This document shows positions 2,787-62,734 of a DNA stretch of 64,000 nucleotides, one piece after another (the stretch's first letter is position 1; each line of letters opens with the position of its first letter). This DNA comes from Macrostomum lignano. Lineage: Eukaryota. The DNA lies in contig NIVC01003113.1 in assembly GCA_002269645.1 (NCBI GenBank), positions 1 to 64,000 of the forward strand, in the 5' to 3' direction. The notes under the pieces were generated by a model that ran no database searches, was not told the DNA's origin, and was given only the letters and a program-made list of their open reading frames with translations. The translations under genes were made by a program, and so were the position numbers.

Positions 2787-3215
2787 ATGATCCGATTTAT
2801 CCTGATCCAGAACCGGGCGGGCAAGACTCGCCTAGCCAAATGGTACATGGAGTTTGCCGACGAGGAGAAGCAGAAGTTAATTGAAGAGGTACACGCCACC
2901 GTGACCGTACGCGACGCTAAGCACACAAACTTTGTGGAGTTTCGCAATTATAAAATCGTTTATAGACGCTATGCAGGTTTGTACTTTTGCATCTGCGTCG
3001 ATATTGGCGACAATAATCTGATGTACTTGGAGGCTATTCACAATTTTGTCGAGGTACTGAACGAATACTTTCAAAACGTGTGCGAACTGGACTTGGTGTT
3101 CAATTTCTACAAGGTGTACACTGTGGTTGACGAGATGTTCCTGGCTGGCGAGATCCGGGAGACCAGCCAGACTAAGGTGCTGCGCCAGCTGATGATGCTG
3201 TCTACCTTGGAGTGA
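2787..3215 (+). CDS. AP2S1: AP-2 complex subunit sigma, 142 aa, intronless CDS
   Basis: [20 protein letters not shown]...[13 protein letters not shown]...[33 protein letters not shown] is the highly conserved AP2 sigma sequence; ATG to TGA intact. Confidence 0.98.
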
Positions 3216-15163: not shown

Positions 15164-17075
15164 ATGGTTGTACACGACTTCATCTCGGCAGCTGGCAAGA
15201 TGGAGCTGCTCACGCATGTGGGCTTGGACGATTTTGCGGACAGGTTAAACTGTCTGTTCACAGGTGAGCGGTACTGCAAAATTATACAAAGTGACTTACT
15301 AATTGACTCCAAGCGTGCGCATATGGTACTGTTTTAAGTGGGGTGGGGTGGGGGGGGGGGTTCGCCCCCATGGCCCCATACCGAATCTGGTAGTATGACC
15401 AGAGAGTACCGAGATTAGCTAACAGATAGAGAGAGAGAGCCAATGTATAGCTTCGACCATAGACAAAAGTCTTTCACTGAAATTAGACTGAAACTCTCCG
15501 TGGCACGTTCATAATACCAATATTTTTGTCTATTGACTTTTGTCTATGGTCTAAAAGTTAGAGCCCGAGGATTTTATTGCTTCTTGGTGCCTTTGTTCGG
15601 GTCTGGGGTAAAGGCCCCAGCCAAGAAACGCGTCCTAAGCCTAAAAATCCCCATAACTAACTCCAAATTCCAGTCTGCTTCCTGATGGTGTTCAGCTGCG
15701 CCACCACCATCAAGACCTACTTTCTGAATCCCATCTTCTGCTATCTCCCCAACATCGTCGGCTCCCACGAGGGCCAGTCGGCCTACGTCAACAACTACTG
15801 CTACACGGAGGGCACTTACAATGTCCCGCTAGAGGATTTCAAAATTGACAACACCAAAGCCTACTGGGACGAAGAGTTCCGCAGCAGAAAGATCTACTAT
15901 TACCAGTGGCTGCCGTTCCTGCTGGGCGTTCAGGGCATCATTTTCTGCATTCCGCGATTCACCTGGCAGCTGCTGGTGACCCAGCGCGCCGGCACGGACC
16001 TGTTCCAGCTGGTGCGGGTCGCCTGCGACGCCGGCCGGGCAGACGGCGAGAAGCGGGAGAAGCTCAGAGGTCATGTGACCCGCCAGCTGGAGCTGTGGCT
16101 GTTCAACACTCGCGAGCTGAGCAGCAGCCCGATGAAGCAGACCAGGCGGCGGCTGTACGGCTTCCTGTCCTGCTGCGTGGCCTCCAAGCGACTGGGCACC
16201 TGGCTGGTGTTCTGCTACTTCGTCATCAAATGCGCCTACATTGTCAACCTGATTTGCCAGCTGCTGCTCATGTGCCACGTGTTGCAGGTGAAAAGCTCGC
16301 GGTCTTACAGCGGCTCCCTGCTGTGGCTGACGTCCACCTTCGGGCTGGACCTGCTGTCGGAGCTGGCGCAGGGCCGCGACTGGCAGGACACGGGCCTGTT
16401 CCCCGGAGCGGCGCCTGCGCCATCAAGACTCGCCAGACAGCCGATGCGCAGTACATCTTTGCCCAGTGCGCCCTGCCAGTCAACATGATCCACGAGAAGA
16501 TCTTCATTTTCCTGTGGTTCTGGTACGTGGTTGTGCTCGTGCTGACGCTACTCAGCGTTGCTCTATGGTGCTACCGGCTGCTCAGCCACCAGCGCAGCCG
16601 CCTATTCAAGAAGTACCTGTTCCTGGCCGAGAAGCTGTCCCAGAAGAACAAGGACGACGAGCGGCCGGTTGTGGAAAATTTTGTGACGAAATTTTTGCGC
16701 CACGATGGCGCCCTGGTGCTGCACATGATGGCGCTGAACTGCGGTGACGTCATCACCACGGAGATCTGCGCCGATCTCTACGGCGAGTTCAAGACTCAGT
16801 ACTCACACCTGGACCTGCGCAATCCAACAGACATCGGCGATGCCATCGCGTTGAACGTCAGCCACAGCAGCATCGCCGCGATGTCACCGAACGGCGCCGT
16901 CGGCACCATCGGCAAGCGGCGACGTCGTCGGAGTAACAGCGGCGCCGGCGCAGACGAGAAGCACAACAGCCGGGCGAGCGTCTTCTTCGCTGAGCCGTCG
17001 GCCCCGCTGATGGAGGAGGACGCTGGGGCGGCCCCGGTGGCCCCGTCTGCGGACGCTTCCAGCACCGCGCTGTGA
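15164..17075 (+). CDS. Innexin A, ~500 aa; join(15164..15263,15674..17075) with a 1-bp deletion at CCCC 16401-16404
   Basis: Exon 1 MVVHDF...GLDDFADRLNCLFT, phase-1 GT-AG intron, exon 2 VCFLMVFSCATT...PIFC...NNYCY...YYQWLPF...FP(R)SGAC...QCALPVNMIHEKIFIFLWFW. Adding one C restores 1503 nt (501 codons) and collinearity with innexin B. Confidence 0.93.
15455..15551. mobile_element. 97-bp mini-element with perfect 17-bp terminal inverted repeat GACCATAGACAAAAGTC
   Basis: 15455-15471 is the exact reverse complement of 15535-15551; lies in the innexin A intron; no obvious TA or 8-bp TSD. Confidence 0.8.
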
Positions 17076-32339: not shown

Positions 32340-35300
32340 CTACTTTGCCGGAATGCTTCGCTGACTTGCTCGCCGATTTCTCTTTGTTGAAGCTTCGTGC
32401 CAGGCGGCACTGGCGGCGCTGCACCGTCCCAGAGGCTGCAGCTCGGCCATGGGCACCGCCTGCTGTTCTCCGTGCCGCCTCCCGCCTCTGCCACCGCCTT
32501 CGCCTTCACCACCGCGGCCGCAGAGCTTCAACAGCCGGCAGGCCAGCAGGCTAGCAAACTCCTGGCGGAATTTCCGGCTGAACAAATAGTACGGCACAAT
32601 GTTGATGGCGGAGTTCAGCACCACCAGCAGGTTGGACACCTCGTAGAAGGTGAACACCGGCATGCCGACCGTGCCGTTGGTGTGCACCGGCCGGACGCTC
32701 CAGAGCACGTGCGACACCGCGGCGGGGATCTGGCAGGTGAAGAACAGGCAGATGACGCCGATCAGCATCAGGTTGGTGTCGCTACGACGCCGCTCGCTGG
32801 CGTTGATCTGACGGCCGCGGCGGCGGGAGCGGCGGACCTCCAGGATCAGGAAGACGTTCATGACGGCGATGCAGACGAAGGGCAGAGCCACCACCAGCAG
32901 CAGCCACGCGGTGAGGTGGTAGGCGATGCGGAAGGAGTCTGACAGGCCGAAACCGGACGTGTGAAACCACTGGATGGTGCCGAGTTCCTCGTACACCTGC
33001 AGTTTCTCCAGCTGCTCGCTGTGCAGCCAGCTGGACGCATTGCCGAGGCCCTGCAGGGTGTCATTCAGCCCGAGCCGGTAGGGCCAGTCGTGCCGGAAGA
33101 TCACCTGTTCGAAGGCGCGCGGCAACGAATAGACGCCGGCTCCGGCGAAGATGGCGCCGATCACGCAGTAGACGATTCGGCGGCTGCAACGACGCTCGGC
33201 GACGAACGGGTGGCAGATCATCACGTAGCGGTCGACGGTAAAGGCCAGGGTGAGCCAGACCGAAGCCACCTGCGGCATGGCAGGGTGGGGAGGCTGAGTG
33301 AGTGATGGAGTGGAGTGACTTTGAAGCTGAGCTGAGTGACTGATGGAGTGGAGTAACTCTTTGAAGCTGAGTGACTGATGGAGTGACTCTATGAAGCTGA
33401 GTGAGTGATGGAGTGACTCTTTGAAGCTGAGTGAGTGATGGAGTGACTCTATGAAGCTGAGTGACTGATGGAGTGGAGTAACTCTTTGAAGCTGAGTGAC
33501 TGATGGAGTGACTCTATGAAGCTGAGTGAGTGATGGAGTGACTCTATTATGAAGCTGAGTGAGTGATGGAGTGACTCTATTATGAAGCTGAGTGAGTGAT
33601 GGAGTGACTCTCTTAGGCTGAGTGAGTGATGGAGGGACTCTATTATGAAGCTGAGTGAGTGATGGAGTGACTCTATTATGAAGCTGAGTGAGTGATGGAG
33701 TTGAGTCAATCTATGAAACTGAGTCAGTGATGGAGTGACTCTATTATGAAGCTGAGGGAGTGATGGAGTTGAGTCAATCTATGAAACTGAGTGAGTGATG
33801 GAGTGACTCTATTATGAAGCTGAGTGAGTGATGGAGGGACTCTATTATGAAGCTGAGTGAGTGATGGAGGGACTCTATTATGAAGCTGAGTGAGTGATGG
33901 AGGGACTCTATTATGAAGCTGAGTGAGTGATGGAGGGACTCTATTATGAAGCTGAGTGAGTGATGGAGTGACTCTATTATGAAGCTGAGTGAGTGATGGA
34001 GGGACTCTATTATGAAGCTGAGTGAGTGATGGAGGGACTCTATTATGAAGCTGAATGAGTGATGGAGGGACTCTATTATGAAGCTGAGTGAGTGATGGAG
34101 TGACTCTATTATGAAGCTGAGTGAGTGATGGAGTGACTCTATTATGAAGCTGAGTGAGTGATGGAGTTGAGTCAATCTATGAAGCTGAGTGAGTGATGGA
34201 GTTGAGTCAATCTATGAAACTGAGTGAGTGATGAGTGGAGAGACGCGATCAGCCTGAGTGCGTACACACAGGTATGCAGTCTGTGCAAAAGATAAAAAGG
34301 CATAAATCTGTAGTTCCATGCACGTGCTCAAGTGCGAAAGCAGCAGAGCAGGAGCAGCATGGGTCCCGCAGTAACAGATCTGTTGAGAGCGCTGCTCCGA
34401 GCTCTCAAGTGCTCGAGTACGGACAGATAGACGGCAATAATCCTCAGCTTCCAGCATCCTATTAAATTTCCAATGCAATGCATTCTAACATGTTGGACAC
34501 CTTGCAGAAACTGAGGATCTGTGTTTGTCAGGTGAGACTAAGGAAAATTTCGCACCTTCAGTTTGGGGTAAGCAGTAAAGTACATTCCTGCTTCGCAAAT
34601 TTTCCAGACTTTCGAATCAAATATCTCGGTTCTAAATAAAAAATTCAACTGCACCTTATTTTTTAATTTTCGCTACTATGACATCTGTCCCAGATAGCTA
34701 CTGATCCTGTCTACTGACAAAATCTGACAAAATTAGAATGCTCGCTACATCTTCACAATCAGTGTGGCGCACTGGTTATAACTCTGGGGAAAGGAAAAAA
34801 AATTGAAAAGTGCAAGAGGCTGGGAGGGACGGATAGCGAAATCGCGCGCATGGGGCAACTCTGGTAGATCTGTCAAAAAAAGCTGTATGACTGCCTGCTC
34901 GCTATTATTCAATTTTCATTCCCATTGCGTGCTGGAGAGAGTCGAATTTTTTTGTCTTGCTCAACAAAATTTAGAATTTCGAAGGGCTATGGTTAAGCAT
35001 ATGGAATAGCTATGATGAGCGTTTTCTACTCTATCCTGCAGTCATTGGGTGAAAGGATAAGCATTGGTTTGAGGATTTCAATTGAATTCATTCCATATTA
35101 TCTTATTCGTTGCTAGGGGCAACGGTTGAACTCTAGGCTATAAATGAATGAATGAGTGAGAGTCGAAGAACGGTTCGGCCATAGACAGTTTGTCTGTGCA
35201 CTGGGATTGACTTTATGATGAGACCATAGACAGTCGCTCTCTACTGCAGTGTGTAATGATTAATGAATGACGTAGAGTGAGGCCAGGAGCTTTGGCCATA

Positions 35301-38300
35301 GACAGTTTATTATTTGCAGTGTGGAATGAACGAATTAGAAGTGAAACCAGGGGGTTTCAGCCATAGACAGTTTATTATGTGCAGTGTGGAATGAATGACT
35401 CAGAAGTGAGGCCAGGGGGTTTCAGCCATAGACAGTTTATTATGTGCAGTGTGGAATGAATGACTCAGAAGTGAGGCCAGGGGGTTTCAGCCATAGACAG
35501 TTTATTATGTGCAGTGTGGAATGAATGACTCAGAAGTGAGGCCAGCAGGGTGGTTCGGCCATAGAGAGACTATTTCTACAGCCAGTCGGGCGTTCAAAAA
35601 GCCGAAGAATTACCCAGAAATCTAATAAAATTAATTCTGCTCCTTATTAACAAAAATTCGGCCAAACAGCTAGCACCAAACAGCAGCAATGTCAAGACAT
35701 TGTGGCACCAGTGATTTGGGCTTCCACCGTCAACCGTCAACCTTCTTTATTTTTGAGCAGCCCTATTAGCTACCGTCCCGCTCTCATATCCGGTGTCACA
35801 GAGCCAGCTTTATTGCAATTCCATATGCGAGCATATATCTATTTAGAACTGCGGCGGGAGTAAAAAACAAAAGAATTCATTGCAAGCATTTGCGCGAGAC
35901 TAAAAAAATCTGCTTCTTTCGCCAAAGAGAGAGAGAGAGAGAGAACTTCTGCTCCCAGGAGATTCGTTAAAGGCTCGAATTTTGGCCATATTTTCGACTT
36001 ACTCCCCGGGGGAAATCTTTTTCAACGAGTTCTGGGAAGAAAAAAACTTCGATAAAAAAGCTTGCTTATGAAACTTTATGGGTTAATAAATATTATAATC
36101 CATTTTATTCCTGCTTTAATCCTTAATATTCGCTTAACTCGGATTAGAGCTGAGCGAAGGTCGGTTGAGGATCTTAGCGTCAACCACTGGGGATCGGGAA
36201 ACTCTTTTTTGCATGCACGGGATTTTTTACTTTTACTGACACTTTGTACTGAGGCTCTGAATGCATGGGAAGAGCGCTGGAAAGAGAGATAGAGGGAGAG
36301 AGGGAGAGAGGGAGAGAGGGAGAGAGGGAGAGAGGGAGAGAGGGAGAGAGGGAGAGAGGGAGAGAGGGAGAGAGGGAGAGAGGGAGAAAAGGTGAGAGGG
36401 AGAGAGAGTGAGAGGGAGAGAGGGAGAGAGGGAGAGAGGGAGAGAGGGTGAGAGGGTGAGAGGGAGAGAGGGAGAGAGGGAGAGAGGGAGAGAGAGAGAG
36501 AGGGAGAGAGAGAGAGGGAGAGAGGGAGAGAGGGAGTGAGGGAGACAGGGAGAGAGGGAGTGAGGGAGACAGGGAGAGAGGGAGAGAGGGTGAGAGGGAG
36601 AGAGGGAGAGAGGGAGACAGGGAGACAGGGAGAGAGGGAGAGAGGGAGAGAGGGAGACAGGGAGACAGGGAGAGAGGGAGAGAGGGTGAGAGGGAGAGAG
36701 GGAGAGAGGGAGACAGGGAGACAGGGAGAGAGGGAGAGAGGGAGACAGGGAGACAGGGAGAGAGGGAGAGAGGGTGAGAGGGAGAGAGGGAGAGAGGGAG
36801 ACAGGGAGACAGGGAGAGAGGGAGAGAGGGAAAAGGGAAGGAAGAGGGAAAAGAGAAAGAACGGCGATGAAGTGAGATGGAACTAATCACAGACAGATGG
36901 CCCATAAGACGGTGGAATACACAAGTAAAAAAGGAAGTGAAATAGCTATAAAAAGTGGAAGCGATTCAGAGGGACATTATCAGATAGAGCATGCACAGAG
37001 AGACTGGTGCAGAGAACACACACAGAGAAAGAAGCTGAAAGCTGGGGCGATACTGAAATGGGATGGAGATACGAAAGGCCGGTAGACAAGGGGAACCAGT
37101 TTCTTTTTGCTAGGATTGCAAAATCCCGAGATTCCAAATTTAGTTATAGTTTCAGTCACGAAGTGGCTTTGCAATAAAAATAATGCAATTTTCTCGGAGA
37201 CAAATGGATAAAAAAATTCTTGGTCTGAGCTGATGAGACTGGCCCATCATCAGTCATAGTGGAAAGTACACATCAAAGTTTTATAGCCTTGAAGCCCGAG
37301 GGTAGACTGTAGACTCAATAATTTTATTAATTATAGGAAAAAGTAGCTATTATTTTCCAACTGAATGGTAAAATACCATATTTTCACCAGCATAAAAGCC
37401 TGTCTCTTGGAGGGCGCCACTGTCTCATGGTGAGTGCCCCTGTCTCTTGGAGGGCGCCACTGTCTCATGGTGGGCGCCCCTATCTCTTGGAGGGCGCCAC
37501 TGTCTCTTGGAGGGCGCCACTGTCTCATGGTGAGCGCCCCTGTCTCATGGAGGGCGCCCCTGTCTCTTGGTGGGCGCCCCTGTCTCTTGGTGGGCGCCCC
37601 TGTCTCTTGGTGAGCACCCCTGTCTCATGGTGGGCGCCACTGTCTCATGGTGGGCGCCACTGTCTCTTGGTAGGCGCCCCTGTCTCTTGGAGGGCGCCAC
37701 TGTCTCTTGGTGGGCGCCCCTGTCTCTTGGTGGGCGCCCCTGTCTCTTGGTGGGCACCCCTGTCTCATGGTGGGCGCCCCTGTCTCTTGGTGGGCGCCCC
37801 TGTCTCTTGGTGGGCACCCCTGTCTCATGGTGAGCGCCCCTGTCTCATGGTGGGCGCCCCTGTCTCATGGTGGGCGCCACTGTCTCATGGTGGGCGCCCC
37901 TGTCTCTTGGTGGGCGCCCCTGTCTTTTGGTGAGCACCCCTGTCTCATGGTGGGCGCCACTGTCTCATGGTGGGCGCCACTGTCTCTTGGTGGGCACCCC
38001 TGTCTCATGGTGAGCGCCCCTGTCTCATGGTGGGCGCCCCTGTCTCATGGTGGGCGCCACTGTCTCATGGTGGGCGCCCCTGTCTCTTGGTGGGCGCCCC
38101 TGTCTTTTGGTGAGCACCCCTGTCTCATGGTGGGCGCCACTGTCTCATGGTGGGCGCCACTGTCTCTTGGTGGGCACCCCTGTCTCATGGTGGGCGCCCC
38201 TGTCTCATGGTGGGCGCCCCTGTCTCTTGGTGGGCGCCCCTATCTCTTGGAGGGCGCCACTGTCTCATGGTGGGCGCCCCTGTCTCTTGGTGGGCACCCC

Positions 38301-45300: not shown

Positions 45301-47779
45301 CTTGCTTGCGTAGCCGCCTGCTTATCCGGAATTCCGGAGTTTGGGAGCTGAGAATTGAGTGCTAAAAAAGCTGAAAACACTCCGAGCCCCCGGCTCACTA
45401 GCATCCGGCACGTAGCGGCCCCGCATGGTGCCAATGGCCGGCCAGAACAGTCCAATGCAGGCCTCGAACGCCAAGAAGCCGCCGAAGGTGGCCGGGATCA
45501 GGGCGTCGGTTTTCTTCCAAGCCGGCAATGCGAAGCACAGAGCGCTGACGGCGAACACCCAGCGCATGAAGCTCTCGGGCCTGGCCTGGGCTGAGCACAG
45601 GCTGTAGAGCTGACTGCCGATCATCATGCTCACCATGTAGGCCGCGAAGATGTAGCCGTGCGGGATCCTGCCAGCATGGCCGGCCGCTACGGAGGGCACT
45701 GCGGAGGGTTTAGAGCTTCTCTTTGTAGCTGAACTTATTTGTGGCGCTGCCTGAACTTTCTTGTAGCACTGCCCGAATTTTCATGCGGCTCTACCTGAGA
45801 TTCTTTGCAGCAACTACCTGAGATTCTTTGCAGCAACTACCTGAGATTCTTTGCAGCAACTACATGAGATTCTTTGCAGCAACTACCTGAGATTCTTTGC
45901 AGCAACTACCTGAGATTCTTTGCAGCAACTACCTGAGATTCTTTGCAGCAACTACCTGAGATTCTTTGCAGCAACTACCTGAGATTCTTTGCAGCAACTA
46001 CCTGAGATTCTTTGCAGCACCTGCCGCAATTCTTTGCAGTAATACCTGAACTTCTCTGCATAACTAGCTGAACTTTGTTAAACTACATGGGATTTTGGCA
46101 GCTCTGTCTGAGCTTATTTTTAGCACCAACCGAACACGACACGGCATCGCAGCCGCAACTCACTGAGCTTCTCTGGAGTCAAGGCCGGGGTCCACTCCAG
46201 CACAAAGCAGTACATGCTGCCCTCGAACATGGCCTGAGTGATGCCCAAGCTGAGCACTTTGCGGTCAGTGCGCACCGCATTCCATGCAGCAGCGAAGTTG
46301 GCCCCGAGTTGAGCACCGGAGTCGCCATAATTCTCTGGCCAGCGCAGCCAGGCGATGGCAGCCATGGCCAGCAGCACCAGCAGGGCGCAGTCGAAGGGGC
46401 AACGAAGCCGAACCAGTCCACGGCGTACTGGGACACCAAACCGCTGGCTATGGCGCCAATGCTGTTGAAGAAGATTGCCAGATTAAATGTCTCCTCTAAT
46501 TGGTGCTCGCTGTAGCCTCTGCTATGATGCTCGTGAACTAGCCAGGACTCGAACCCGCTCCACAGTATACTAGTTGCTGTGCCACCTAGCAACCGGCCAA
46601 TCAGCAGCACCCAGAAGTTATTGAAGTGTTTAGTAATGCAGGTCAGGCCATAGACGATGCCATAGATGATGCAGTTTTTCCGACGGCCATACTTGTCAGC
46701 GATGGAGCCGACTATGGTGCCAAACAGCATGCTGGCACCAAATCCGGCCACAAATAGGAACTCAATATCTCGCTTGGACATGCCATAGTGCTCATAAAGT
46801 GCATATACATATGGACCCTGTAGCCAGTCTCCAGCTGTGTGGGGATATTGAAGAATAATTCTTTTAATAAATTATAAGTCTGCTAAGCTTTCTATAAAAT
46901 TGCTTTGTCAAAGCAGCAATGGTTCTTTTAACTAAAAGGTATTTTGGCCATAAACCAGTTTGACCTAAGATTATGTAGCTGTAAATATAAATTAAAATTA
47001 AGACTTGAATTATAAACTAATATAACTTATAGGTTAAATAAAAAAATTTATACATGTATCTAAATATTGCTAGGGGTTAGCAGAATATTTGTTGACACCT
47101 CTCTGCTTGTATCTAGATGCCTAGAGCCTCTAGCTAAGTCAAGAACTATGCTTGAATTTAAAGATTTGCTAAAAATAATTTAAAGATTCCCCATTTATAC
47201 AAACTATTTTTTAATCTATAATTTAATTTAACAATTTGATACAATACATATATACTTAAGTCTAATAATTCACCCAAAAGCATATAAGCTACTTTACAAA
47301 TGTATGAAAAAGATACACACAATTTAAGAAAAGCATTTATAAGCATATGATATTGCAATTGATATCCTATGGACTAGGTTAACAGAAATTAACTTTAATA
47401 TTTAAACTAGTTACCCAGCAAGGCTTTTGCATGATTATACATTTATATATTCTTAAATTGACTAGAGTAGCTTACAATCATAAAATAAAATTGACCTAAT
47501 ATAAATAATATAATTAGTATACTAGTTTAGCAAATATTTTATAAGTCACTACTCTCTCTAGTCAATGCTGCAGTATCAAGACTCATGAAGCAAAAAAATT
47601 AAAATGCTGAAACTATACTTACCCATTCCAAGAGTATAAACAATAAGATATGAATTTCGAAATGAAACGAATTCTGCATCATTACTGCCTTCTGGTGGAG
47701 TGTTTGTTTTGCGTGTAAATATATATAGCCCAAAACATACTAAACATAAAAAATAGAAAGAGAAAATAAACAGCGACAT
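42368..47779 (-). CDS. MFSD5: Molybdate-anion transporter MFSD5, ~476 aa; complement(join(42368..42521,43325..43472,45399..45698,46164..46834,47623..47779)) with a 1-bp deletion near 46394-46399
   Basis: Motifs FRNSYLIVYTLGM|AGDWLQGPYVYALY, LFVAGFG, GRLLGG, FESW, QAMFEGSMY, WTPAL, FEACIGLFWPAIG, RATVMNFFRVPLN. All introns are GT-AG with matching phases; the exons sum to 1430 nt, and one extra base gives 477 codons. Confidence 0.92.
43515..44530. repeat. ~27-bp G-rich minisatellite (GAGTGGGGTGGCTGTTTTAAAGAGCGG)n in MFSD5 intron 3
   Basis: Read directly; degenerate units. Confidence 0.92.
44687..45205. mobile_element. ~520-bp MITE with ~38-bp imperfect TIRs
   Basis: GAATCGCACGACAAGCCATCAAGCTAATTTTCGTGCA pairs with 45168-45205; a related solo end sits at 42681-42725. 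Confidence 0.65.
45792..46025. repeat. 23-bp minisatellite (ACCTGAGATTCTTTGCAGCAACT)n in MFSD5 intron 2
   Basis: About 10 copies. Confidence 0.95.
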
Positions 47780-51320: not shown

Positions 51321-54300
51321 TCAGTCATCCTTGTCGCCAGCCTCACTAGCCCGCCGAGTTGCCCGCTCCAGCTCGGCAATCAGCGCCATACTCCGCTTCT
51401 CCCTGTGCTCGTCAGTCCCATCGCTGACGTCATCCTCCGAGTCCCGGCTGGCCATCAGCTTCCTGAACTCATCACTGCCAGACGGCCGGCGTTTCTCAAA
51501 CAGATCGGGGAACTGAAAGTCGCGGTACTCTTCGGCTAAAAATACATAGGCAACCTTTCTATAGAGATCTAACGGCTGCGGCTTCATGGTGTACGGACTG
51601 AACACCATGCGGCTGGGATGCGCGTGATCCGACTCCGGGGCGCCCTCGACCGGGTGAACCTGCGCGTGCAGCAGCCGAACTCCGTACAGCTTCTCAAGCA
51701 TCTGGCGCACCTCATCAGCTGACATTTGCGGTTGAACTTCGAATTTGAGTACGCCTGGCGGCAAAGGGAATCTGGGTCGGACTAGCTTCATCCAGTAGTT
51801 GGGCATGTACAGGCGCACCTGTTGATGGCGTCGAATTTGTTACTGAATAAGATTTTACGAAAAAATTGCTACACATACTAAAAGTAGTGATTAGCACATT
51901 TAACATTAGCACAGTTTAGTTTCAAACTTTTAAGAAGTAAATGCGGTTAATGAGAATAGAGGAGAGAGAGTTTCTTTATATGGGTCAGAGGGCGATTCTT
52001 TATGCGGGTCAGAGGGCGATTCTTTATGCGGGTCAGAGGGCGATTCTTTATGCGGGTCAGAGGGCGATTCTTTATGCGGGTCAGAGGGCGATTCTTTATG
52101 CGGGTTAGAGGGCGATTCTTTATGCGGGTCAGAGGGCGATTCTTTATGTGGGTCAGAGGGCGATTCTTTATGTGGGTCAGAGGGCGATTCTTTATGTGGG
52201 TCAGAGGGCGAATCTTTATGTGGGTCAAAGGGCGATTCTTTATGTGGGTTAGAGAGCAAATTCTTTTTTACGGACTACTTAAGTGTCGCTTATAAAAAAT
52301 TTCCCCATTATAAATCCATTAATTCAGGCGTTGTAAGTATGTAGGTGTAATGTATAATTTATTGAAAATGTTGTCAACATTCGTCAGTAGACCTTATACC
52401 TTTTTTATCTATTGACTATTGTATTCACTGTGGGCTAGAGAAAATATATTAGACAGTTTAAACTATTTTGATATATGATAAGAGACCATAGCTTGACGTA
52501 GACTTTAGGCTATATTCCAGGTTGTTTTTATAGGATACGATTTATTATGCCTATATTTTTTAACTTTGATTGATTAATACACTATGACTAGTTTTTATAT
52601 ATTATATCTCTTGATACCATAGGGCATAGACCTACAAAAATTGATAGCCTACCTATTAGATAGGCTATTCCCTACTTTGAAGCATTTTGCAAGTCATCTA
52701 ATATTACTATATCGCTACCAAGGCTGCTGGAAAGGAAGGCAATCCGCATTGGCTCTCCCGCCAATCCCAACCCCTCCCAGGGTAGAGAGGAAGATGGGAC
52801 CAAGGATGATAGAGTACATGGCTTGTCAGTCTACCCCCGCCGTGCGGCCAAAACTGGTTTGCGCTGCCGTCACTTCTATCTTACTGGCTGCTCTGAAGGC
52901 CGTGGGAGTCCCGGCGGGGAGAGCGCAAGGAGAGGGGAGGGGGAGGGAGGCGATTAATATAAGCAACGTTCATACTTTTCGAGAAGAGAAGGCCTTAAAT
53001 AAGGCGCGAGGTGGGGTAGAAGCTGTCTCAGCCAGAGTGAAGTGACGGCTATGCGACACAATTTATGAGAGGGACCATTATTTGACTCGATAACCATCTA
53101 CCTCTCGGCGAAACCAGAAAGTGAACCAGATAAGAATTACAGTACATATGCTAAGCATTATGGTTCAGGCTGGGCCGCATGTACACGAAATTGCAGTGTT
53201 GGGCACCGGTCCGTTAATAAGCGTTAAGATTTTTTTAAACTAACGGATTAACGAATATGCGTTTATAATTTTGTGAGTTAAAGGACAAATTCATCGTTAA
53301 CGTTAATGACAGTATCAAGACCAACGACTCAAAGAAAGAAAAAAAATACAAGTCTGACGAGAAGTTACAACATTACGAATGTATTCGAATTTACCTAAAT
53401 GCCTAATTAATCTCTTTGTTTATGACGATGATCATGCAGATGTAACAACTTCTTACTAATGAACTTTAATAACGAATTAAAATTGTGAACTTTATTGCTT
53501 GCGCGTGAGCATCGATCGCTTTGATTCACTTCTTTGCCAATCTTTCGTAACTTTCTGCTGCGCCTGCTAATGCTACTGAAACAACCTTCCTATTCGTATT
53601 TTATTACTAACTAATTAGCTTTCAAGTTTCAAATAAATAAGTAACTTAGTTTACCGTTTGCTTACTTTTAGTAGTATTATACTTACAAGTTTTTACTATC
53701 ATTATTATTTGTTATTTTTAGCTTGTAAATTTCTTAGATGACCTGTGTTTCACTAAAAAGATAGAAAAGCAGACAGTGCATTATGAAGTCTGCTTAGGAA
53801 AAAAGTGCAAGATTTCTGTATTTTCTGTGTTAAATTTAACGGATTAACGCTTATTAACGATTATCAGTTAAATTTCAGTTAACTTAACGAAATTAAGAGT
53901 GTAAAAGTTAAGATTTTTTTGTTTTAACGCTAACGCCTTTGCCATTAACGAAAGTTAAGATTTTCATTAACGTTGCCCAACACTGCGAAATTGCTACATT
54001 TGTGAAGAGTGAGAGAGTAGGCGAACTGCTTCTTCACGAAGGTAACTTTTTTCATACTGACAAAAAGACAAACGCCACATCTTACTACAAATACTGAAAT
54101 ACGCATTATCATTCCCGCGTCGTTGTTAGCGTCGGGTTCGGGACGTCAACTTCTGGAGCGCATGATCACCCAGCGCCAACATCTGCCAACATGAATTATT
54201 GTGACGAGATAATTGTCCATAATAAGCTGCGCGAGGCGCCAGCAAAAGAGAATAGGCGACGCTGCAGCACTGGGTGCAAATTCAAATGCACGCTTATGAA

Positions 54301-57547: not shown

Positions 57548-58258
57548 TGCTGAAGAGAAGAGCAAAACTCTGAGTTATTAACTATAAATTGTCTTACATG
57601 TTAAGGTCTTCATCATAGGACACACTACCTAAGATATAACCCATTACTATATGACTACAAAGGTCTTTGCATGCTGTCTATATTAAAAAAGAAATATAAA
57701 AGATCATTGAAAGTAAAGTAACTATCTATACCTATAAAAATGATGTCATGCATATAGCAGATGTTATTGCTTAAGGGGCCCACTCTGAATTTCCAAGTGC
57801 ACTTGACATGAGAACAAAGTAATACATAATAACTAAAACAATACGAAATTGAATCGTTATAGACTTTTTACACATGGACTTAAACCCCTCACTTAAAACA
57901 AAATTATTGAATACATAATTTTACATACATATAGTATATTACTTGATATACTATATATATCAATATAATAGTCCGACTCATGAGTGCGCGCAGCGCACGA
58001 GTGAGCATAGGACTATTATCCTAAAGTCTCACTTACGAATAACCGCATTGTCGAATTTCAGTGGGGCCATAGACAAAAAGGGCATCGAAAGGAGAGAGGG
58101 GTTACCGAGGAGAGAGAGACATAAAGACTGAGGTGGTTTACTGGAGTTTGGGCCATAGACAACGAAGTTGCAAACAGGCTGGGGGTTAAGAGGGTGGAAA
58201 GGAAGGAGATGTGGAGAGAAAGAGAGAATAAAACGTAAATAGCTACATTCGCTTGGCC

Positions 58259-59751
58259 ATGGAGAACCAGACGTCATATCCGATCAACTGGGGCAATCTG
58301 CCTGTCGAAAGTTTAGCCAACGTATCTAGCAGCAAACTCAATTGGATCTCAAGACTTTCCACATCTCAGAAGGACATGAAGGATAACGAAGACTTTTTGA
58401 ACTTCTTGCACTTGCACCGGCCGAGGATAATGCTCCAGCTGAAGAGGATGGAGAGAATGAAACTGAGCCGAAACGAGTTCCTTTGGATATGCAAGAGGCA
58501 ATGACGAAAGATGAAATAGTGAGCCTACCAACCAAGACGCGAGAGCAGATGATTGCTCATGGTAACGGTTTTGTGCAGTTCCTTCGCGAACATGGAGCTG
58601 CTGTTCATGAATTGAGTCGTGTTGAGATGTGTGAGTTTCTTAGGTATTACTACTACCAATTGCGTCGCCATGATGGCGGTCCATACTCGCCTGCAAGTCT
58701 TGTGTGCATCCGCGCCGGGATACAGCGCTTTCTGACTATGGTGGCTGGATTAACGATCAACATGATCGATGGTGAGGAATTCGTTCTAGCGAATAGAATG
58801 CTCCGAATGAAAGTCAGGGAATGGCACAACTCCGGCGGTCAGGCTCGATCATATCCGCCAATCGAGGAGGGTGATATGGAGAAGCTACGGACGTATTTCG
58901 ACAGATCAAGTGCAGAGACCACTCAGGATGAATTTCTATTTCGCGTTATGTACGGCCTAGGAGAACGAGGAAGGGAACATCTGGAGTCGATTGAATCCAA
59001 GAAGTGGTTGGTGAAGCGCGAAGACTCGGATGGAAGACCGTACTACGCATTGCCTGTACTGAATTCCAAAAACAAGTCTGCCGATCCCAATCGAGCCAAG
59101 CGTGACATCGACGTAAAGCAGGCGAGAATCTACGATGTTGGAATTGTGGACGACTACATGGCTATATTACCAACGGATACGAAGAACGACTCATTGTTTC
59201 CCAGGCCACTGAAGAATGCAGGAGGCACCAGACGATTTTGCTCGAAGCAGAAACGAGGGATAAATTACCTGAGGACTTTCATGAAGGCGCTGAGCAAAAA
59301 AGCGAAGCTGTCTAAGGAATACACCAATCATAGCATTCGGTGAGTCAGTTGGTCGGGGAAGTGCATGTGATGTTTTCAACTTATGTCTGATTGAGTCTAA
59401 TTTACAGTTCAATTGCTCAATTGTTCTAGAGTTAGCAGAGTGTGTGACCTGGAATCGGCTGGGCATTCGATGAGCGAGATCATGGCTATCACGGGTCAAA
59501 AGTCCGAGAGCACGGTCCGGCGCTACCTGGCAGTTAAACGGGACAAGTCCCTGCAACAATGCAGCGATGCAGTGTCGCGTGCGTTGAACATGGGACAAAG
59601 CGCCGCGACCCACGGTCAAGTAACAATGCCTACTGACATCAGCATCCAAAGTTCCATCGTGCAAGCAGTGAGCGTGTCTGATGGTCGTCAGATGAACGGT
59701 CGGAATATCTTTATTATGAACAACTGCACTTTTAACAATTGCAATCTGTAA
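58259..59751 (+). CDS. Crypton/DUF3504-type tyrosine recombinase YR1, ~467 aa; join(58259..59339,59430..59751) with a 1-bp deletion near 58405-58416
   Basis: YSPASLVCIRAGIQRF, LGERGREH (R), SKN (K), YTNHSI-R (HxxR split by a 90-bp GT-AG intron), ITGQKS (H replaced by Q), VRRY (Y), C-terminal NNCTFNNCNL. 1403+1 nt = 468 codons. Confidence 0.88.
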
Positions 59752-60191
59752 TGGTCTTCGGCACTATGACAATTGCGCCATATTGATACTGCACAATTAA
59801 CTTTCCATAGCGCTAATCTTTTGTTGTTGGTGTTTGCTGTTTTGTTCTAAAAATAGGCGTCCATTATCCCGAGTTTGAAATCATTATCCTGAAGTTTAAG
59901 TGAAAAAATAAATAAATGTGCTCATGGTTTAACCATAGACGATTGCATTATCCTAAAGGCATTTTGAGCATTATCAAAGCCTAAAACCATAGACACAATA
60001 TTATTGTCTCATGATTTCTACACAAAATAGGCGTTTAATAATCTTTCATTATCAAACGGTTGATAATGCATGACTAAATTTAGATACCGTCTATGGTAAT
60101 TCGTCAGAAACTTTGGTCTTAAATGTTAGAAGTTACAGCGAAGACTTCTCAGTTTTTCATTTTAAGCCGTCTTCGCTTGCCTGCCTTAAAC

Positions 60192-61609
60192 ATGACCGCT
60201 ACGCATCTTATCAATTGGTCTCATCTGCCGGTTGATAGTCTGGATGGCGTTTCATCAAGCGAATACTCATTCATTGCTGAGCTGAGCAGTGACAATCACC
60301 GAGATGACAATCAGCTGGAGGACTTTATTAAATTCATTACCGATCATTCACGATCTGACGATGAACTGCTTGGTGTCGATCTGCCGGAATGTGAAGATGA
60401 TGGAGCTTCTGTTGCTACTGATGTCATGGACAAGGCCGAGGTGGATTCTCTACCAAGATCGACCAAGGAGCAAATGTTCCTTTATGGCAAAGCGTTTGCC
60501 AGCTACATGAGTGACTTGGGTCATCCTGTTGAAAGTCTTAAAACAATGGAGCCCAGTAGCCTCAACGAGCACCTGCGGTTCTACTACTTTCGGCTTTCTA
60601 AACCGAATGGAGAGTCGTACTCGCCATCTAGCTTGGTCTGCATTCGGGCCGGCATCCAGCGATTTTTTCACTTCATTATCAAGCGTGAACTCAACATCGT
60701 CGATGATCCTAACTTTGCTACTGCCAATCGCATGCTTCGAGTTAAGGTGCGGGATTTTCATTCTAAAGGCGGGAGCGTGAAGCGTTACGAACCGATAGAG
60801 CGCGCCGATCTAACCAAGTTGTCCAGTTACTTTGATCGCTCGACTGGAGAACGACTACAGGATGAAGTGATTTACACTTTATTGTATGTCTTGGGAGAGC
60901 GCGGTCAAGAGCACCTCCAACACCTTCGTCAGAGAGACATACTCGTAGAAAAAGAAGACGGCGACGGCAAGAAGTATTACGAGCTACCTAACCTCAGAAC
61001 CAAGAACCAGAGTGCCAATCCAGTCAAGGCCAAAGGTTTCAACACAAAGCAAGCGAGAATCTATGGCGGTCAGTATGAACTCATTAAGACCTACCTTCAA
61101 GTCCTGCCCAACGAAACCAAGGACAATTCGTTTTTTCCAAGACCGATGGCAAATAAAGAAGGACAGCTGCAGTTTTCAACTAAGCAGGTTCGTGGGATCA
61201 ATTGGTTAGGATCGTTCATGACTCGATTAAGCACCCTGTGTGAGCTCAGCAAAAAGTATACAAACCATTGCATTCGAGTAACTAGGACGGCTGATCTACA
61301 CGAAGCTGGCTATACTCTGTCCGACATCATGAATATCACGGGACATCAATCTGAGTCGACAGTTCGGCGGTATCTATCGAGGAAACGTGACCACACGCTG
61401 CGAGACATGGCTACGACTGTGGGGAAGCTTTGCAATCAAGTGAATCTCGTACGAACACAGAATTGGTTAGGACTGATCAGCCATCTAACGCTGGATCGTC
61501 AAGCACGATGGACGTGAGTAACCAGAACATTACACTTAGTAGGCAGAACGTCTCAACTATCTTCACGGATTGTCATTTCTCTGGCTGCACTTTCAACTTG
61601 AATGGTTAG
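60192..61609 (+). CDS. Crypton/DUF3504-type tyrosine recombinase YR2, ~472 aa, intronless, with a 1-bp deletion at GGGG 61421-61424
   Basis: YSPSSLVCIRAGIQRF, LGERGQEH, RTKN, YTNHCIR, ITGHQS, VRRY give a complete R-K-HxxR-H-Y set. Adding one G extends the frame to ...TIFTDCHFSGCTFNLNG* (TAG 61607-61609), like the YR1 C-terminus; 1418+1 nt = 473 codons. Confidence 0.92.
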
Positions 61610-62140
61610 AGACATCTGCGTCATTGAGAATTGCAACTATAAACAACTAAAAACTGTAAACTGTTCATTGCTTAACCATTGAAGCTGATTTCTCGTTGAT
61701 ATGAAAAATAAACTCGCAGTTCCACCATAGTCTATGGTAGATGTTGAAAAGTTGGCGTTTGATAATCACAAAATTACACAACGAGAAATAATAAGAGAAA
61801 GAATGTGACAATGAGGCCTTTTTCATATTTCTTTTTATTTCTTTATTTCTTTAGCTACTCAAGTCAGCTCTTACTGTAGCTAAAAATCCAAAATCCTAAC
61901 CATTGTCAATGTCTATGGTGTTCACCCATAGCAAACAAAATAAAAAGGATTAATAGTGCATCACAACAAAAACAGCATAGCAGTAGTAGCCAATGCCTTG
62001 CAAAAGCAAAGACACTTAAGCAGCTAAAGCTAGAATAGAAGCTGATTCTGCTAGTTTAGTATTGCTTCCCTTGTATACATCATTTGTGGGAAATAATTTC
62101 AAAAAATGTTATATAAGACTATATACTGTTTAACTGTCAC

Positions 62141-62734
62141 TAGTGTTCTGCTGTAGCTATGGCTATGGCTATGGGATCTTATGGCAAAAATGGTAAAATA
62201 GGTGCCTATGGTAGATAGCTGCTCTTATGGCTACCACTACAGAAATATGGTAGTTGTTGTCACATTCCATAGATTCCTATAGCCATAGTTATTAATTTAA
62301 AAAAATATTAGAAACAGGTAAAGTAAAACAAAGATCCTTTGGTAAACTGTATTATAGACTTAGAAACTTATAAATTATGCCTAATAAAGAACAATAAAAC
62401 ATTAGCAAACTCTAACTTTTATCAATGTGAGAAATTTCTGCATTAGTACTTTCAGTAGTGATTAGGTATTGTTACTCTTTGTAAAAAGGATAAAATATAA
62501 TCTTACAAAGGCAATTGAGTGTTTGTTTTATTTTCTACCTTAATTTGCAGTTGTTTAAGCACTAGGTTATCTTCTTGATTCAAAATATTTTGTTTCCTAG
62601 ACTTTTTGTTAAAACTACGGCTATAGCAATGGGAAATAAGGGGATATGGTAATATTGGAGTCCCTATGGCTACAGCCATAGTTTTGCTTATGGCTATGGC
62701 TATGGCATATTGACCCCCTTATAGCGGAACACTG
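62141..62734. mobile_element. Old hAT-like MITE with CTATGG/CCATAG subterminal repeats
   Basis: TAGTGTTCTGCTGTAG (62141) pairs imperfectly with TATAGCGGAACACTG (ending 62734); dense GCTATGG/CCATAG repeats at both ends; no clean TSD. Confidence 0.45.

What the first reader, a model, noticed from the sequence alone, without database searches (positions are those of the whole stretch)
58015..61931. Head-to-tail pair of anciently diverged, full-length Crypton-type tyrosine recombinases in one ~3.9-kb block
Seen: two same-strand YR genes about 440 bp apart, collinear end to end (INWxxLPVxSL N-terminus to CxF C-terminus) yet only roughly 40-50% identical by eye. Both frames are full length once one base is restored in each, and the block is CpG-rich between CpG-poor flanks. 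Established: described Cryptons generally carry a single YR, while two- or three-YR modules are known in prokaryotes (XerC/D, Tn554, RIT). Inference: this may be a eukaryotic two-recombinase element, or a domesticated plus active pair, rather than a recent tandem copy.
Basis: partly seen in the sequence, partly recalled or inferred. Interest (0 to 1): 0.88.

Follow-up and report, generated by a model that had tools for sequence, protein, structure and literature searches.

The report
Two Crypton transposons inserted in tandem
The block holds two distantly related Crypton transposon units of the flatworm Macrostomum lignano, sitting head to tail as one 3.9-kb insertion that a second copy of the locus lacks; it is mobile DNA stacked at a shared recombination motif, not shown to be a new two-enzyme machine.

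Summary
Two same-strand tyrosine-recombinase (YR) genes, YR1 at 58259-59751 and YR2 at 60192-61609, are collinear and 44.7% identical, and both keep the catalytic residues. The window is Macrostomum lignano DNA.

A second copy of the locus in assembly GCA_002269645.1 lacks the whole block. Homology stops at 57947 and resumes at 61808, at an ACAATG. That motif bounds related Crypton units in metagenome contigs. So the block is a mobile insertion, not a domesticated gene pair and not a local duplication.

YR2 is intact at the same locus in GCA_002269645.1; the window lacks one G in a G-run. YR1 carries a real frameshifting deletion of about 10 codons. Its second interruption is a 90-nt intron, conserved in a relative.

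Each gene has its own promoter-type motifs and polyA signal. Relatives occur solo. They also occur as head-to-tail pairs of different families (L015, L007-L009). One unit is 99.9% identical next to neighbours only 92% alike, which indicates repeated insertion at a resident Crypton's end.

Best reading: two independent CryptonA-like units stacked by site-specific integration. A composite that moves as one unit is not excluded.

The parts
57948..57964 (.). Left junction: 17 nt of AT-rich sequence, ending in TCAAT (57960-57964), between the last base shared with the empty locus and the YR1 palindrome.
   Evidence: Homology to L060 stops at 57947. TCAAT is the imperfect counterpart of the ACAAT crossover motif (inference).
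57965..58019 (+). 5'-terminal palindrome of the YR1 unit. Arms are ATAATAGTCC and GGACTATTAT, with a GC-rich apex GCGCGCAGCGC flanked by CAYGAGTG twice.
   Evidence: DNA fold of -16 kcal/mol, z -4.9, 0 of 200 shuffles as good. Homologous to the palindrome upstream of the solo element in L002. Relatives L006 and L015 have palindromes of the same design.
58067..58160 (+). Two CCATAGAC motifs, 99-192 bp upstream of the YR1 ATG; promoter-type elements.
   Evidence: The motif occurs 18 times in the window against 1.6 expected. Pairs also lie 140-340 bp upstream of the host AP-sigma and innexin genes.
58259..59339 (+). YR1 exon 1, broken near 58405-58415 by a frameshifting deletion of about 10 codons.
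   Evidence: Three-frame translation. Other M. lignano copies (P0004, P0029, P0028, P0033) read ..NFLHFLESG[DN]TADDLPLLPAED.. here. The lesion is identical in L061.
59340..59429 (+). YR1 intron: 90 nt, GTGAGT..TCTAG, phase 2, directly after the catalytic HSIR box.
   Evidence: Sequence. L004 (P0006) has an intron at the same site and phase. YR2 has no intron there.
59430..59751 (+). YR1 exon 2, with the nucleophile Tyr (VRRYL), the C-terminal NCTFNNC motif and the stop codon.
   Evidence: Y417 is invariant in alignment A1.
59862..60068 (.). Cluster of six CATTATC motifs, five direct and one inverted, in the intergenic region. It includes the 12-nt repeat ATTATCCTAAAG (59947), also found at 58015. 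Candidate recombinase-binding sites.
   Evidence: Six of the window's 12 CATTATC fall within 207 bp. An analogous CATTAT cluster lies upstream of the solo P0002 element.
59907..59912 (+). AATAAA polyA signal of YR1.
59995..59999 (+). ACAAT, the best candidate for the junction between the YR1 unit and the YR2 unit. It is followed by ATT and ATTGT, forming a mini-palindrome.
   Evidence: By analogy with ACAATG at every unit boundary in L006-L011 and L015. The inverted repeat of the YR2 unit starts at 60003. This is inference: ACAAT also occurs at 59769 and 59793, and L001 starts only at 60054.
60003..60059 (+). Imperfect inverted repeat of the YR2 3' end (partner 61755-61812).
   Evidence: Local alignment with 1 of 500 shuffles as good in the focused test, but weak in the broad test (111 of 500). 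Its outer edge falls exactly at 61812.
60047..60068 (.). CATTATC-AAACGGTT-GATAATG: 7-nt inverted arms around an 8-nt spacer, a classical YR core-site layout.
   Evidence: (repeat I17). The independent YR2 contig L001 begins at 60054, the first base of the spacer.
60192..61609 (+). YR2 gene with no intron. The window copy lacks one G of a five-G run at 61420; otherwise it is an intact 472-aa ORF.
   Evidence: L061 differs from the window only by this G over 4001 bp and encodes the 472-aa protein at 100% identity. Upstream CCATAGAC motifs lie at 59933, 59987 and 60089.
61707..61712 (+). AATAAA polyA signal of YR2.
61808..61813 (+). ACAATG, the right end of the block and the crossover/target motif.
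   Evidence: L001 (another YR2 copy) diverges from the window after 61812. Homology to the empty locus L060 resumes at 61808, and L060 reads ..TTTGAG ACAATG AGGCC... The same motif ends units of the P0019 family and of L015.

Best explanation
The block is two separate CryptonA-like DNA transposon units from two long-diverged families of Macrostomum lignano, lying head to tail.

Anatomy:
- YR1 unit, about 57965-59999: a 5' palindrome, promoter-type motifs, a YR gene with one intron, and a polyA signal. It is disabled by a frameshifting deletion.
- YR2 unit, about 60000-61812: promoter-type motifs, an intact intronless YR gene, and a polyA signal.

Mechanism, following the Goodwin/Kojima model (PMC3212892) with support from Chlamydomonas (PMC9977147):
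- Each unit excises as a circle. Its tyrosine recombinase then joins it to a short chromosomal sequence that matches its own terminal crossover motif, here (A/T)CAAT(G).
- Integration leaves that motif at both ends of the resident unit. Those ends are therefore ready-made targets for the next Crypton that uses the same motif, so units of different families pile up head to tail.

What is shown and what is inferred:
- Shown: the genes, their catalytic residues, the outer ends of the block, its absence from a second copy of the locus, and insertion next to resident units in relatives.
- Inferred: the exact internal junction, the order of the two insertions, and that CATTATC and the palindromes are the recombinase-binding sites.
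For: 1. Identity. YR1 is 95-98% identical to M. lignano UniRef proteins. Alignment A1 (22 sequences) shows invariant R260, K294, H382, R385 and Y417. Of its members, 15 hit the QRICH1 domain, 14 hit Phage_integrase and 10 hit DUF3504. The best solved-structure match is XerA, over the HxxR..Y region.

2. Mobile insertion. L061 is the same locus with both genes. L060 is a second copy of the locus, with flanks 97.9% and 95.8% identical and no YR anywhere in 26.8 kb. It carries 73 bp of AT-rich filler in place of the 3860-bp block, and homology resumes exactly at ACAATG.

3. YR2 has its own 3' end. Contig L001 is 99.3% identical over 60054-61812 and then runs into unrelated flank.

4. Separate transcription units. 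Each gene has upstream CCATAGAC motifs of the kind found upstream of host genes, and its own AATAAA.

5. Relatives show what the unit is.
- P0002 is a solo YR with the same upstream palindrome and motifs.
- The P0019 family has a unit of about 1825 bp bounded by ACAATG. It occurs solo (L006) and as a 3'-to-5' junction through a single ACAATG (L011).
- In L007-L009 a P0019 unit abuts a different Crypton unit that has its own palindrome and its own YR N-terminus.
- L015 carries two intact YRs, 56% identical, head to tail, with ACAATG at positions 57, 2149 and 3932.

6. Targeted, sequential insertion. In L007 versus L008 the left units differ at 1 of 1832 positions. Their right neighbours are only about 92% alike, and the left flanks are unrelated.
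Against: - No state of this locus with only one unit was found, so the two could have arrived together.
- The left junction reads TCAAT, not ACAAT. The 17 nt left of it do not match the filler in L060, so the empty site is not perfectly clean.
- The internal junction is only inferred. ACAAT occurs 11 times in the block.
- YR2 lacks a large 5' palindrome (fold z -2.0).
- L001 starts at 60054, not at about 60000.
- I could not search the M. lignano genome for other YR1 and YR2 copies with their flanks.
Confidence: 0.68

Rival explanations
1. It is a composite two-gene Crypton. The pair moves as one circle, cut out at the outermost ACAAT sites. It may or may not need both recombinases, in the way XerC/XerD or the Tn554 and RIT modules do.
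For: The whole block, not one unit, is missing from the second copy of the locus. The right edge is a clean crossover motif. Head-to-tail pairs recur in other organisms (L015, L007-L009). In L015 the two units share a 116-nt palindrome region that is 92% identical although the proteins are 56% identical.
Against: YR1 is frameshifted here, so the pair cannot now work as two enzymes. Each gene has its own promoter-type motifs and polyA signal. Relatives are often solo (L002, L005, L006, L018). L007 versus L008 shows very different ages for the two members of a pair. UniRef holds 7 YR1-type M. lignano models (an eighth comes from MetaClust) but no YR2-type model at 90% identity or above.
Confidence: 0.2
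2. It is a local tandem duplication of one YR gene, and the two copies then diverged in place.
For: Same strand, collinear and adjacent.
Against: Identity is only 44.7%, yet a copy of the locus just 2-4% diverged lacks both genes. Only YR1 has the intron, which it shares with L004. YR2 is closer to P0002 and P0003 (50%) than to YR1. The non-coding parts do not align with each other.
Confidence: 0.02
3. One or both genes are domesticated host genes, like the DUF3504 genes KCTD1, ZMYM and QRICH1, kept at a fixed locus.
For: There is a weak QRICH1-domain hit. YR2 versus L001 gives pN/pS of 0.34, from only 11 changes.
Against: The block is absent from the second copy of the locus. The genes are multicopy with different lesions. 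The catalytic residues are kept. They are not annotated as genes in L061. The block carries transposon-type ends.
Confidence: 0.03

Closest known systems
CryptonA elements of animals (Kojima & Jurka 2011, PMC3212892; Goodwin et al. 2003 model)
   Same: Each unit has a single tyrosine-recombinase ORF of about 450-500 aa and no reverse transcriptase. There is no GCR1_C C-terminal domain. The family is related to DUF3504 and QRICH1. The ends carry a short direct-repeat motif consistent with circle integration, and unit length is about 1.8-2.0 kb.
   Different: Animal Cryptons were reported to have no terminal repeats. Here the YR1 unit and its relatives (the solo L002 element, the P0019 family, L015) start with a 55-125-nt palindrome. 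Units of different families lie head to tail at a shared (A/T)CAAT(G) motif. I found no paper in the held library describing Cryptons in Macrostomum or Crypton tandems.
CryptonF-1_cRei of Chlamydomonas, seen transposing in mutation-accumulation lines (PMC9977147)
   Same: A terminal 5-nt motif (CACCG) is matched to a near-identical target (CAYCG). Clean excisions leave only the target. Insertions favour gene-proximal intergenic DNA; this block lies about 400 bp upstream of an MRPL23-like gene.
   Different: It belongs to a different Crypton group (F, with another domain make-up) and uses a different motif. Stacking of different families was not reported there.
Tandem accretion of integrative elements at one att site in bacteria; two-recombinase modules (XerC/D, Tn554, RIT)
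   Same: Site-specific integration regenerates the att site, so related elements stack head to tail. This is what the block works like.
   Different: Those systems are prokaryotic. XerC/D, Tn554 and RIT need their several recombinases to act together, which is not shown here and is unlikely with YR1 broken. This comparison rests on my own knowledge, not on a tool result.

Membership tests
Tyrosine recombinase superfamily | Catalytic Arg, Lys, His-x-x-Arg, His/Trp (or variant) and the Tyr nucleophile, in order. | tested here: met
   R260, K294, H382, R385 and Y417 are invariant in the 22-sequence alignment that includes YR1 and YR2. The fifth position is H in the window's YR2 and Q in YR1 and L001. 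Phage_integrase gives E 2e-5 to 4e-5, just below the gathering score. XerA is the best PDB hit over this region.
Crypton DNA transposons | The YR is the only transposition protein; no reverse transcriptase or methyltransferase (which would indicate DIRS or Ngaro). | tested here: met
   The only long ORFs in 57948-61812 are the two YR genes. Units in relatives are 1.8-2.1 kb with one ORF each.
Crypton DNA transposons | Mobility: multicopy, with presence/absence at a defined site. | tested here: met
   An empty second copy of the locus, L060. Another YR2 copy with a different 3' flank. Eight YR1-type models in UniRef/MetaClust with varied lesions.
Crypton DNA transposons | Short (4-6 bp) direct repeats at the termini, matching the target. 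| tested here: inconclusive
   The right end ACAAT(G) equals the target in L060. The candidate internal junction is ACAAT. The left end is TCAAT (4 of 5), and its flank differs from L060. The pattern is clear in relatives, with ACAATG at all boundaries of L015 and the P0019 family.
Crypton DNA transposons | Circular intermediate and recombinase-dependent integration. | not testable with these tools
   L011 shows a 3'-to-5' junction through one ACAATG, which could be a circle or a tandem, in a relative. There are no read data for M. lignano.
CryptonA group | An animal host, no C-terminal GCR1_C domain, and a YR related to DUF3504 genes. | tested here: met
   The host is M. lignano. Pfam finds only Phage_integrase and QRICH1 in YR1 and YR2, and DUF3504 in 10 of 22 relatives. 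No tree with Repbase CryptonA/I/F/S references could be built, because the references are not available here.
CryptonA group | No terminal repeats (as reported in PMC3212892). | tested here: not met
   There is a 5'-terminal palindrome in the YR1 unit (z -4.9) and much stronger ones in L002, L006 and L015 (z -10 to -15). There is a weak inverted repeat for YR2. This departs from the published description rather than from the family definition.
Multi-recombinase elements (XerC/D-like, Tn554, RIT) | Two or more recombinase genes always together within one pair of ends, and both required. | tested here: inconclusive
   Against: solo relatives, separate promoter-type and polyA signals, a broken YR1, and the unequal ages of the pair members in L007 versus L008. 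For: the block is absent as a whole from L060. Co-occurrence across the M. lignano genome could not be searched.
Domesticated Crypton genes (DUF3504: KCTD1, ZMYM2-4, QRICH1, KIAA1958, WOC) | A fixed orthologous locus, loss of most catalytic residues, and fusion to host domains. | tested here: not met
   The block is absent from the second copy of the locus. The catalytic residues are kept. There are no extra domains.

The most novel reading that the evidence does not exclude
The YR1-YR2 block, together with pairs such as L015, could be a true two-recombinase eukaryotic transposon. Two long-diverged Crypton recombinases would be carried within one pair of ACAAT ends, would move as one circle, and would act together on asymmetric sites, as XerC/XerD do. 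The window copy would simply have lost YR1 function recently.
Probability: 0.1. Interest if true: 0.75.

Novelty: new member of a known kind. Interest (0 to 1): 0.4.

Why it matters
Cryptons are among the least understood eukaryotic transposons. Their ends are hard to define, and animal Cryptons were reported to have no terminal structures.

This locus, with its empty counterpart and the metagenome relatives, gives three concrete and testable things:
- a conserved crossover motif, (A/T)CAAT(G);
- a 5' palindrome and clustered 7-mers as candidate binding sites;
- evidence that the ends of a resident Crypton attract other Crypton families, which builds mixed arrays.

That would explain pairs like this one without invoking a new kind of element. 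YR2 appears intact in the public assembly of a transgenic-friendly flatworm model, so it is a candidate for a first biochemical test of an animal Crypton recombinase. The wider importance is modest, because the mechanism is what the existing model predicts.

Tried and rejected
1. Exact-product look-ups of the window's own YR ORFs found nothing.

2. I looked for other M. lignano copies with flanks. The protein index holds only one YR2-type contig (L001) and no DNA for YR1-type copies. The long UniProt/MetaClust models P0028 and P0033 proved to be chimeric gene models. They splice host exons, absent from the window, onto a cryptic acceptor in the YR1 leader, so they say nothing about neighbours.

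3. I first took CCATAGAC for a Crypton end motif. I rejected that because it is enriched across the window and sits upstream of host genes.

4. I considered the 12-nt direct repeat ATTATCCTAAAG (58015 and 59947) as the ends of the YR1 unit. That was not upheld, because the empty locus puts the left end at or before 57965.

5. I considered terminal inverted repeats for YR1 and found none. For YR2 they are weak.

6. dN/dS between YR1 and YR2 was not attempted, because synonymous sites are saturated at 45% protein identity. YR2 versus L001 has too few changes (5 synonymous, 6 non-synonymous) to be significant.

7. A tree with Repbase reference Cryptons and a Repbase/Dfam look-up could not be done, because those libraries are not available here.

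8. The literature searches found no Macrostomum Crypton paper and no tandem-Crypton paper in the held library.
Full report
**1. What is in the sequence**

Region 57800-62200 holds two long reading frames on the + strand. Conceptual translation gives YR1 (58259-59751, 467 aa) and YR2 (60192-61609, 472 aa). They align end to end, with 202 of 452 aligned positions identical (44.7%). Both start with the (L)INWxxLPVxSL motif and end with C-x-F-x-x-C. No other YR-like sequence is in the window.

Pfam gives Phage_integrase (E 2e-5 to 4e-5) and the QRICH1 domain, both below the gathering score. Across a 22-member alignment of relatives, 15 members hit QRICH1, 14 hit Phage_integrase and 10 hit DUF3504. 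The catalytic Arg, Lys, His-x-x-Arg and Tyr are invariant in that alignment, in both window genes. The nearest solved structure is the archaeal recombinase XerA, over the HxxR..Y stretch.

**2. The organism**

YR1 is 95-98% identical to UniRef proteins of Macrostomum lignano. A third family member, P0002 (BOX15_Mlig009749g2), lies on a contig of assembly GCA_002269645.1.

**3. The reading-frame breaks**

- YR2 lacks one G of a G-run at 61420. A Logan contig (L001, 99.3% identical) and the same locus in GCA_002269645.1 (L061) have five Gs and an intact ORF. L061 is identical to the window over 4001 bp except for this base. So the break is an assembly difference or a polymorphism.
- YR1 has a true lesion near 58405-58415. 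About 10 codons present in other copies (..NFLHFLESGDTADDLPLLPAED..) are missing, out of frame. L061 shares this lesion.
- The second interruption of YR1 is a 90-nt GT..AG intron (59340-59429, phase 2), directly after the HSIR box. Relative L004, from another sample, has an intron at the same site and phase. YR2 has none.

**4. The block is an insertion**

An MRPL23-like host gene (51321-51818, minus strand) encodes protein P0035, which is found on two contigs of GCA_002269645.1.
- L061 is the window's own locus.
- L060 is a second copy of the locus: a homeolog, a paralog or a divergent haplotype. Its flanks are 97.9% identical on the left and 95.8% on the right, and it has no YR anywhere in 26.8 kb.
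- Homology stops at window 57947 and resumes at 61808. L060 has 73 bp of AT-rich filler in place of 3860 bp, and it reads ..TTTGAG-ACAATG-AGGCC.. where the window reads ..AATGTG-ACAATG-AGGCC...
- Independently, L001 leaves the window sequence after 61812. So 61808-61812 is a true element end.
- The left side is less clean. Seventeen unmatched bases ending in TCAAT precede the YR1 palindrome.
- The block lies about 400 bp upstream of the annotated 5' end of the MRPL23-like gene, in divergent orientation. This follows from the coordinates.

**5. Each gene looks like its own unit**

- CCATAGAC is strongly enriched in the window, 18 occurrences against 1.6 expected. Pairs of it lie 140-340 bp upstream of host genes, the AP-sigma gene (2787-3215) and an innexin gene (15685 onward). 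I therefore read it as a promoter-proximal motif.
- Two copies precede YR1 (58067, 58153) and three precede YR2 (59933, 59987, 60089). Each gene also has an AATAAA about 100-160 nt after its stop codon.
- The YR1 unit begins with a palindrome (57965-58019; fold z -4.9). It is homologous to the larger palindrome upstream of the solo P0002 element.
- The intergenic region holds six of the window's twelve CATTATC motifs within 207 bp. They include CATTATC-AAACGGTT-GATAATG (60047-60068), a classical recombinase core layout.

**6. What relatives show**

- P0002 is a solo YR with the same upstream design.
- The P0019 family is 29% identical to YR2. An identical protein is encoded on seven metagenome or Logan contigs, of which six loci (L006-L011) were read. 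Its unit is about 1825 bp, starts with ACAATG plus a 90-nt palindrome, and ends in ..GGTAACAATG.
- That unit occurs solo (L006) and as a 3'-to-5' junction through one ACAATG, which is a tandem or a circle (L011). In L007-L009 it abuts a different Crypton unit that has its own palindrome and its own YR N-terminus.
- A scan of metagenome contigs found L015, with two intact YR genes (459 and 455 aa, 56% identical) head to tail and ACAATG at the left end, the junction and the right end.
- In L007 versus L008, the left units differ at 1 of 1832 positions. Their right neighbours are only about 92% alike and the left flanks are unrelated. A young unit has therefore inserted twice at the 5' end of older units of another family. 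This is direct evidence for targeted stacking rather than movement as a pair.

**7. Mechanism**

The published model has a Crypton circle recombining with a short chromosomal sequence that matches its terminal motif (PMC3212892). It was supported by observed transposition in Chlamydomonas, where the element ends in CACCG and targets CAYCG (PMC9977147).

Under that model, every resident Crypton is flanked by two copies of the motif. Those copies are natural targets for any Crypton that uses the same motif. I propose that this built the window's pair. The outer ends are shown. The internal junction is inferred to be ACAAT at 59995-59999, for three reasons:
- it is followed by a mini-palindrome;
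- the weak inverted repeat of the YR2 unit runs from 60003 and ends exactly at 61812;
- the YR1 polyA signal stays inside the YR1 unit.

ACAAT also occurs at 59769 and 59793, and L001 starts only at 60054. The junction could therefore lie anywhere in about 59775-60054.

**8. Rivals**

- In-situ duplication is excluded by the empty locus and by the intron difference.
- Domestication is excluded by presence/absence, varied lesions in multiple copies and retained catalytic residues.
- A composite that moves as one piece is not excluded, because the locus was seen only with both units or with none. It cannot at present depend on both enzymes, since YR1 is broken.

**9. Novelty**

These are new Crypton families in a flatworm. 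I found no paper on Cryptons in Macrostomum or on Crypton tandems in the held library. The terminal palindromes and the conserved ACAATG add to the published description of animal Cryptons, which reported no terminal repeats (PMC3212892). The arrangement follows from the known mechanism, so I rate it as a new member of a known kind, of moderate interest.

Noticed in passing
window 2449, 2623, 15457, 15542, 35179-35491, 46648, 58067-61918: The 8-mer CCATAGAC occurs 18 times against 1.6 expected. Pairs lie 140-340 bp upstream of host genes (AP-sigma, innexin) as well as upstream of both YR genes. It looks like a common promoter-proximal motif of M. lignano. It is also embedded in a 65-bp tandem repeat at 35262-35545.
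   Followed up: partly
window 61420: The window has GGGG where the same locus in GCA_002269645.1 (L061) and a Logan contig (L001) have GGGGG. This is the only difference in 4 kb, and it alone breaks the YR2 frame. It is probably a homopolymer error in one assembly.
   Followed up: yes
window 1-64000: The window is packed with minisatellite arrays (47 TRF rows with periods of 3-197 nt, several over 1 kb) between a few host genes. The genes are AP-sigma (2787-3215), innexin (15685-17075), a rhodopsin-type GPCR (32340-33278, minus), MFS_5 (46179-46781, minus) and MRPL23-like (51321-51818, minus).
   Followed up: partly
proteins P0028, P0033, P0034, P0007 (UniProt/MetaClust M. lignano models): Several M. 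lignano gene models in UniProt/MetaClust fuse a Crypton YR to unrelated host exons; two of them (P0034, P0007) are named after the host part ('Neprilysin', 'PIPK domain-containing protein'). In P0028 and P0033 the fusion uses an AG just upstream of the YR1 start codon (about 58240). They look like annotation chimeras.
   Followed up: partly
L015:57-172 and L015:2149-2264: In this metagenome pair the two 5' palindrome regions are 92% identical although the two recombinases are only 56% identical. The sites may be homogenised or exchanged between stacked units.
   Followed up: no
L011:1-147 with L011:142-1965: The 3' end of a P0019-family unit is joined to its own 5' end through a single ACAATG. 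This is either a same-family tandem or an assembled circular intermediate.
   Followed up: partly
L016:1933-2172 (minus) next to L016:115-1617 (plus): A second YR C-terminal fragment lies tail to tail with a full YR gene that has an intron-like gap. Not all neighbouring Crypton units are head to tail.
   Followed up: no
alignment A1, N- and C-termini (YR1 58280-58315 and 59720-59748; YR2 60207-60245 and 61571-61600): An N-terminal (L)IN(W/F)xx(L/I)P..(I/L)SG motif and a C-terminal F-x-N-C-x-F motif are conserved across families only 25-30% identical. They lie outside the recombinase fold, and their function is unknown.
   Followed up: no
window 57948-57964 versus L060 9284-9360: The AT-rich sequence left of the insertion (17 nt) does not match the 73-nt filler of the empty locus, which contains ATATTGA four times. 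The site has changed since the two copies of the locus split, or the insertion was not a simple one-step event.
   Followed up: no
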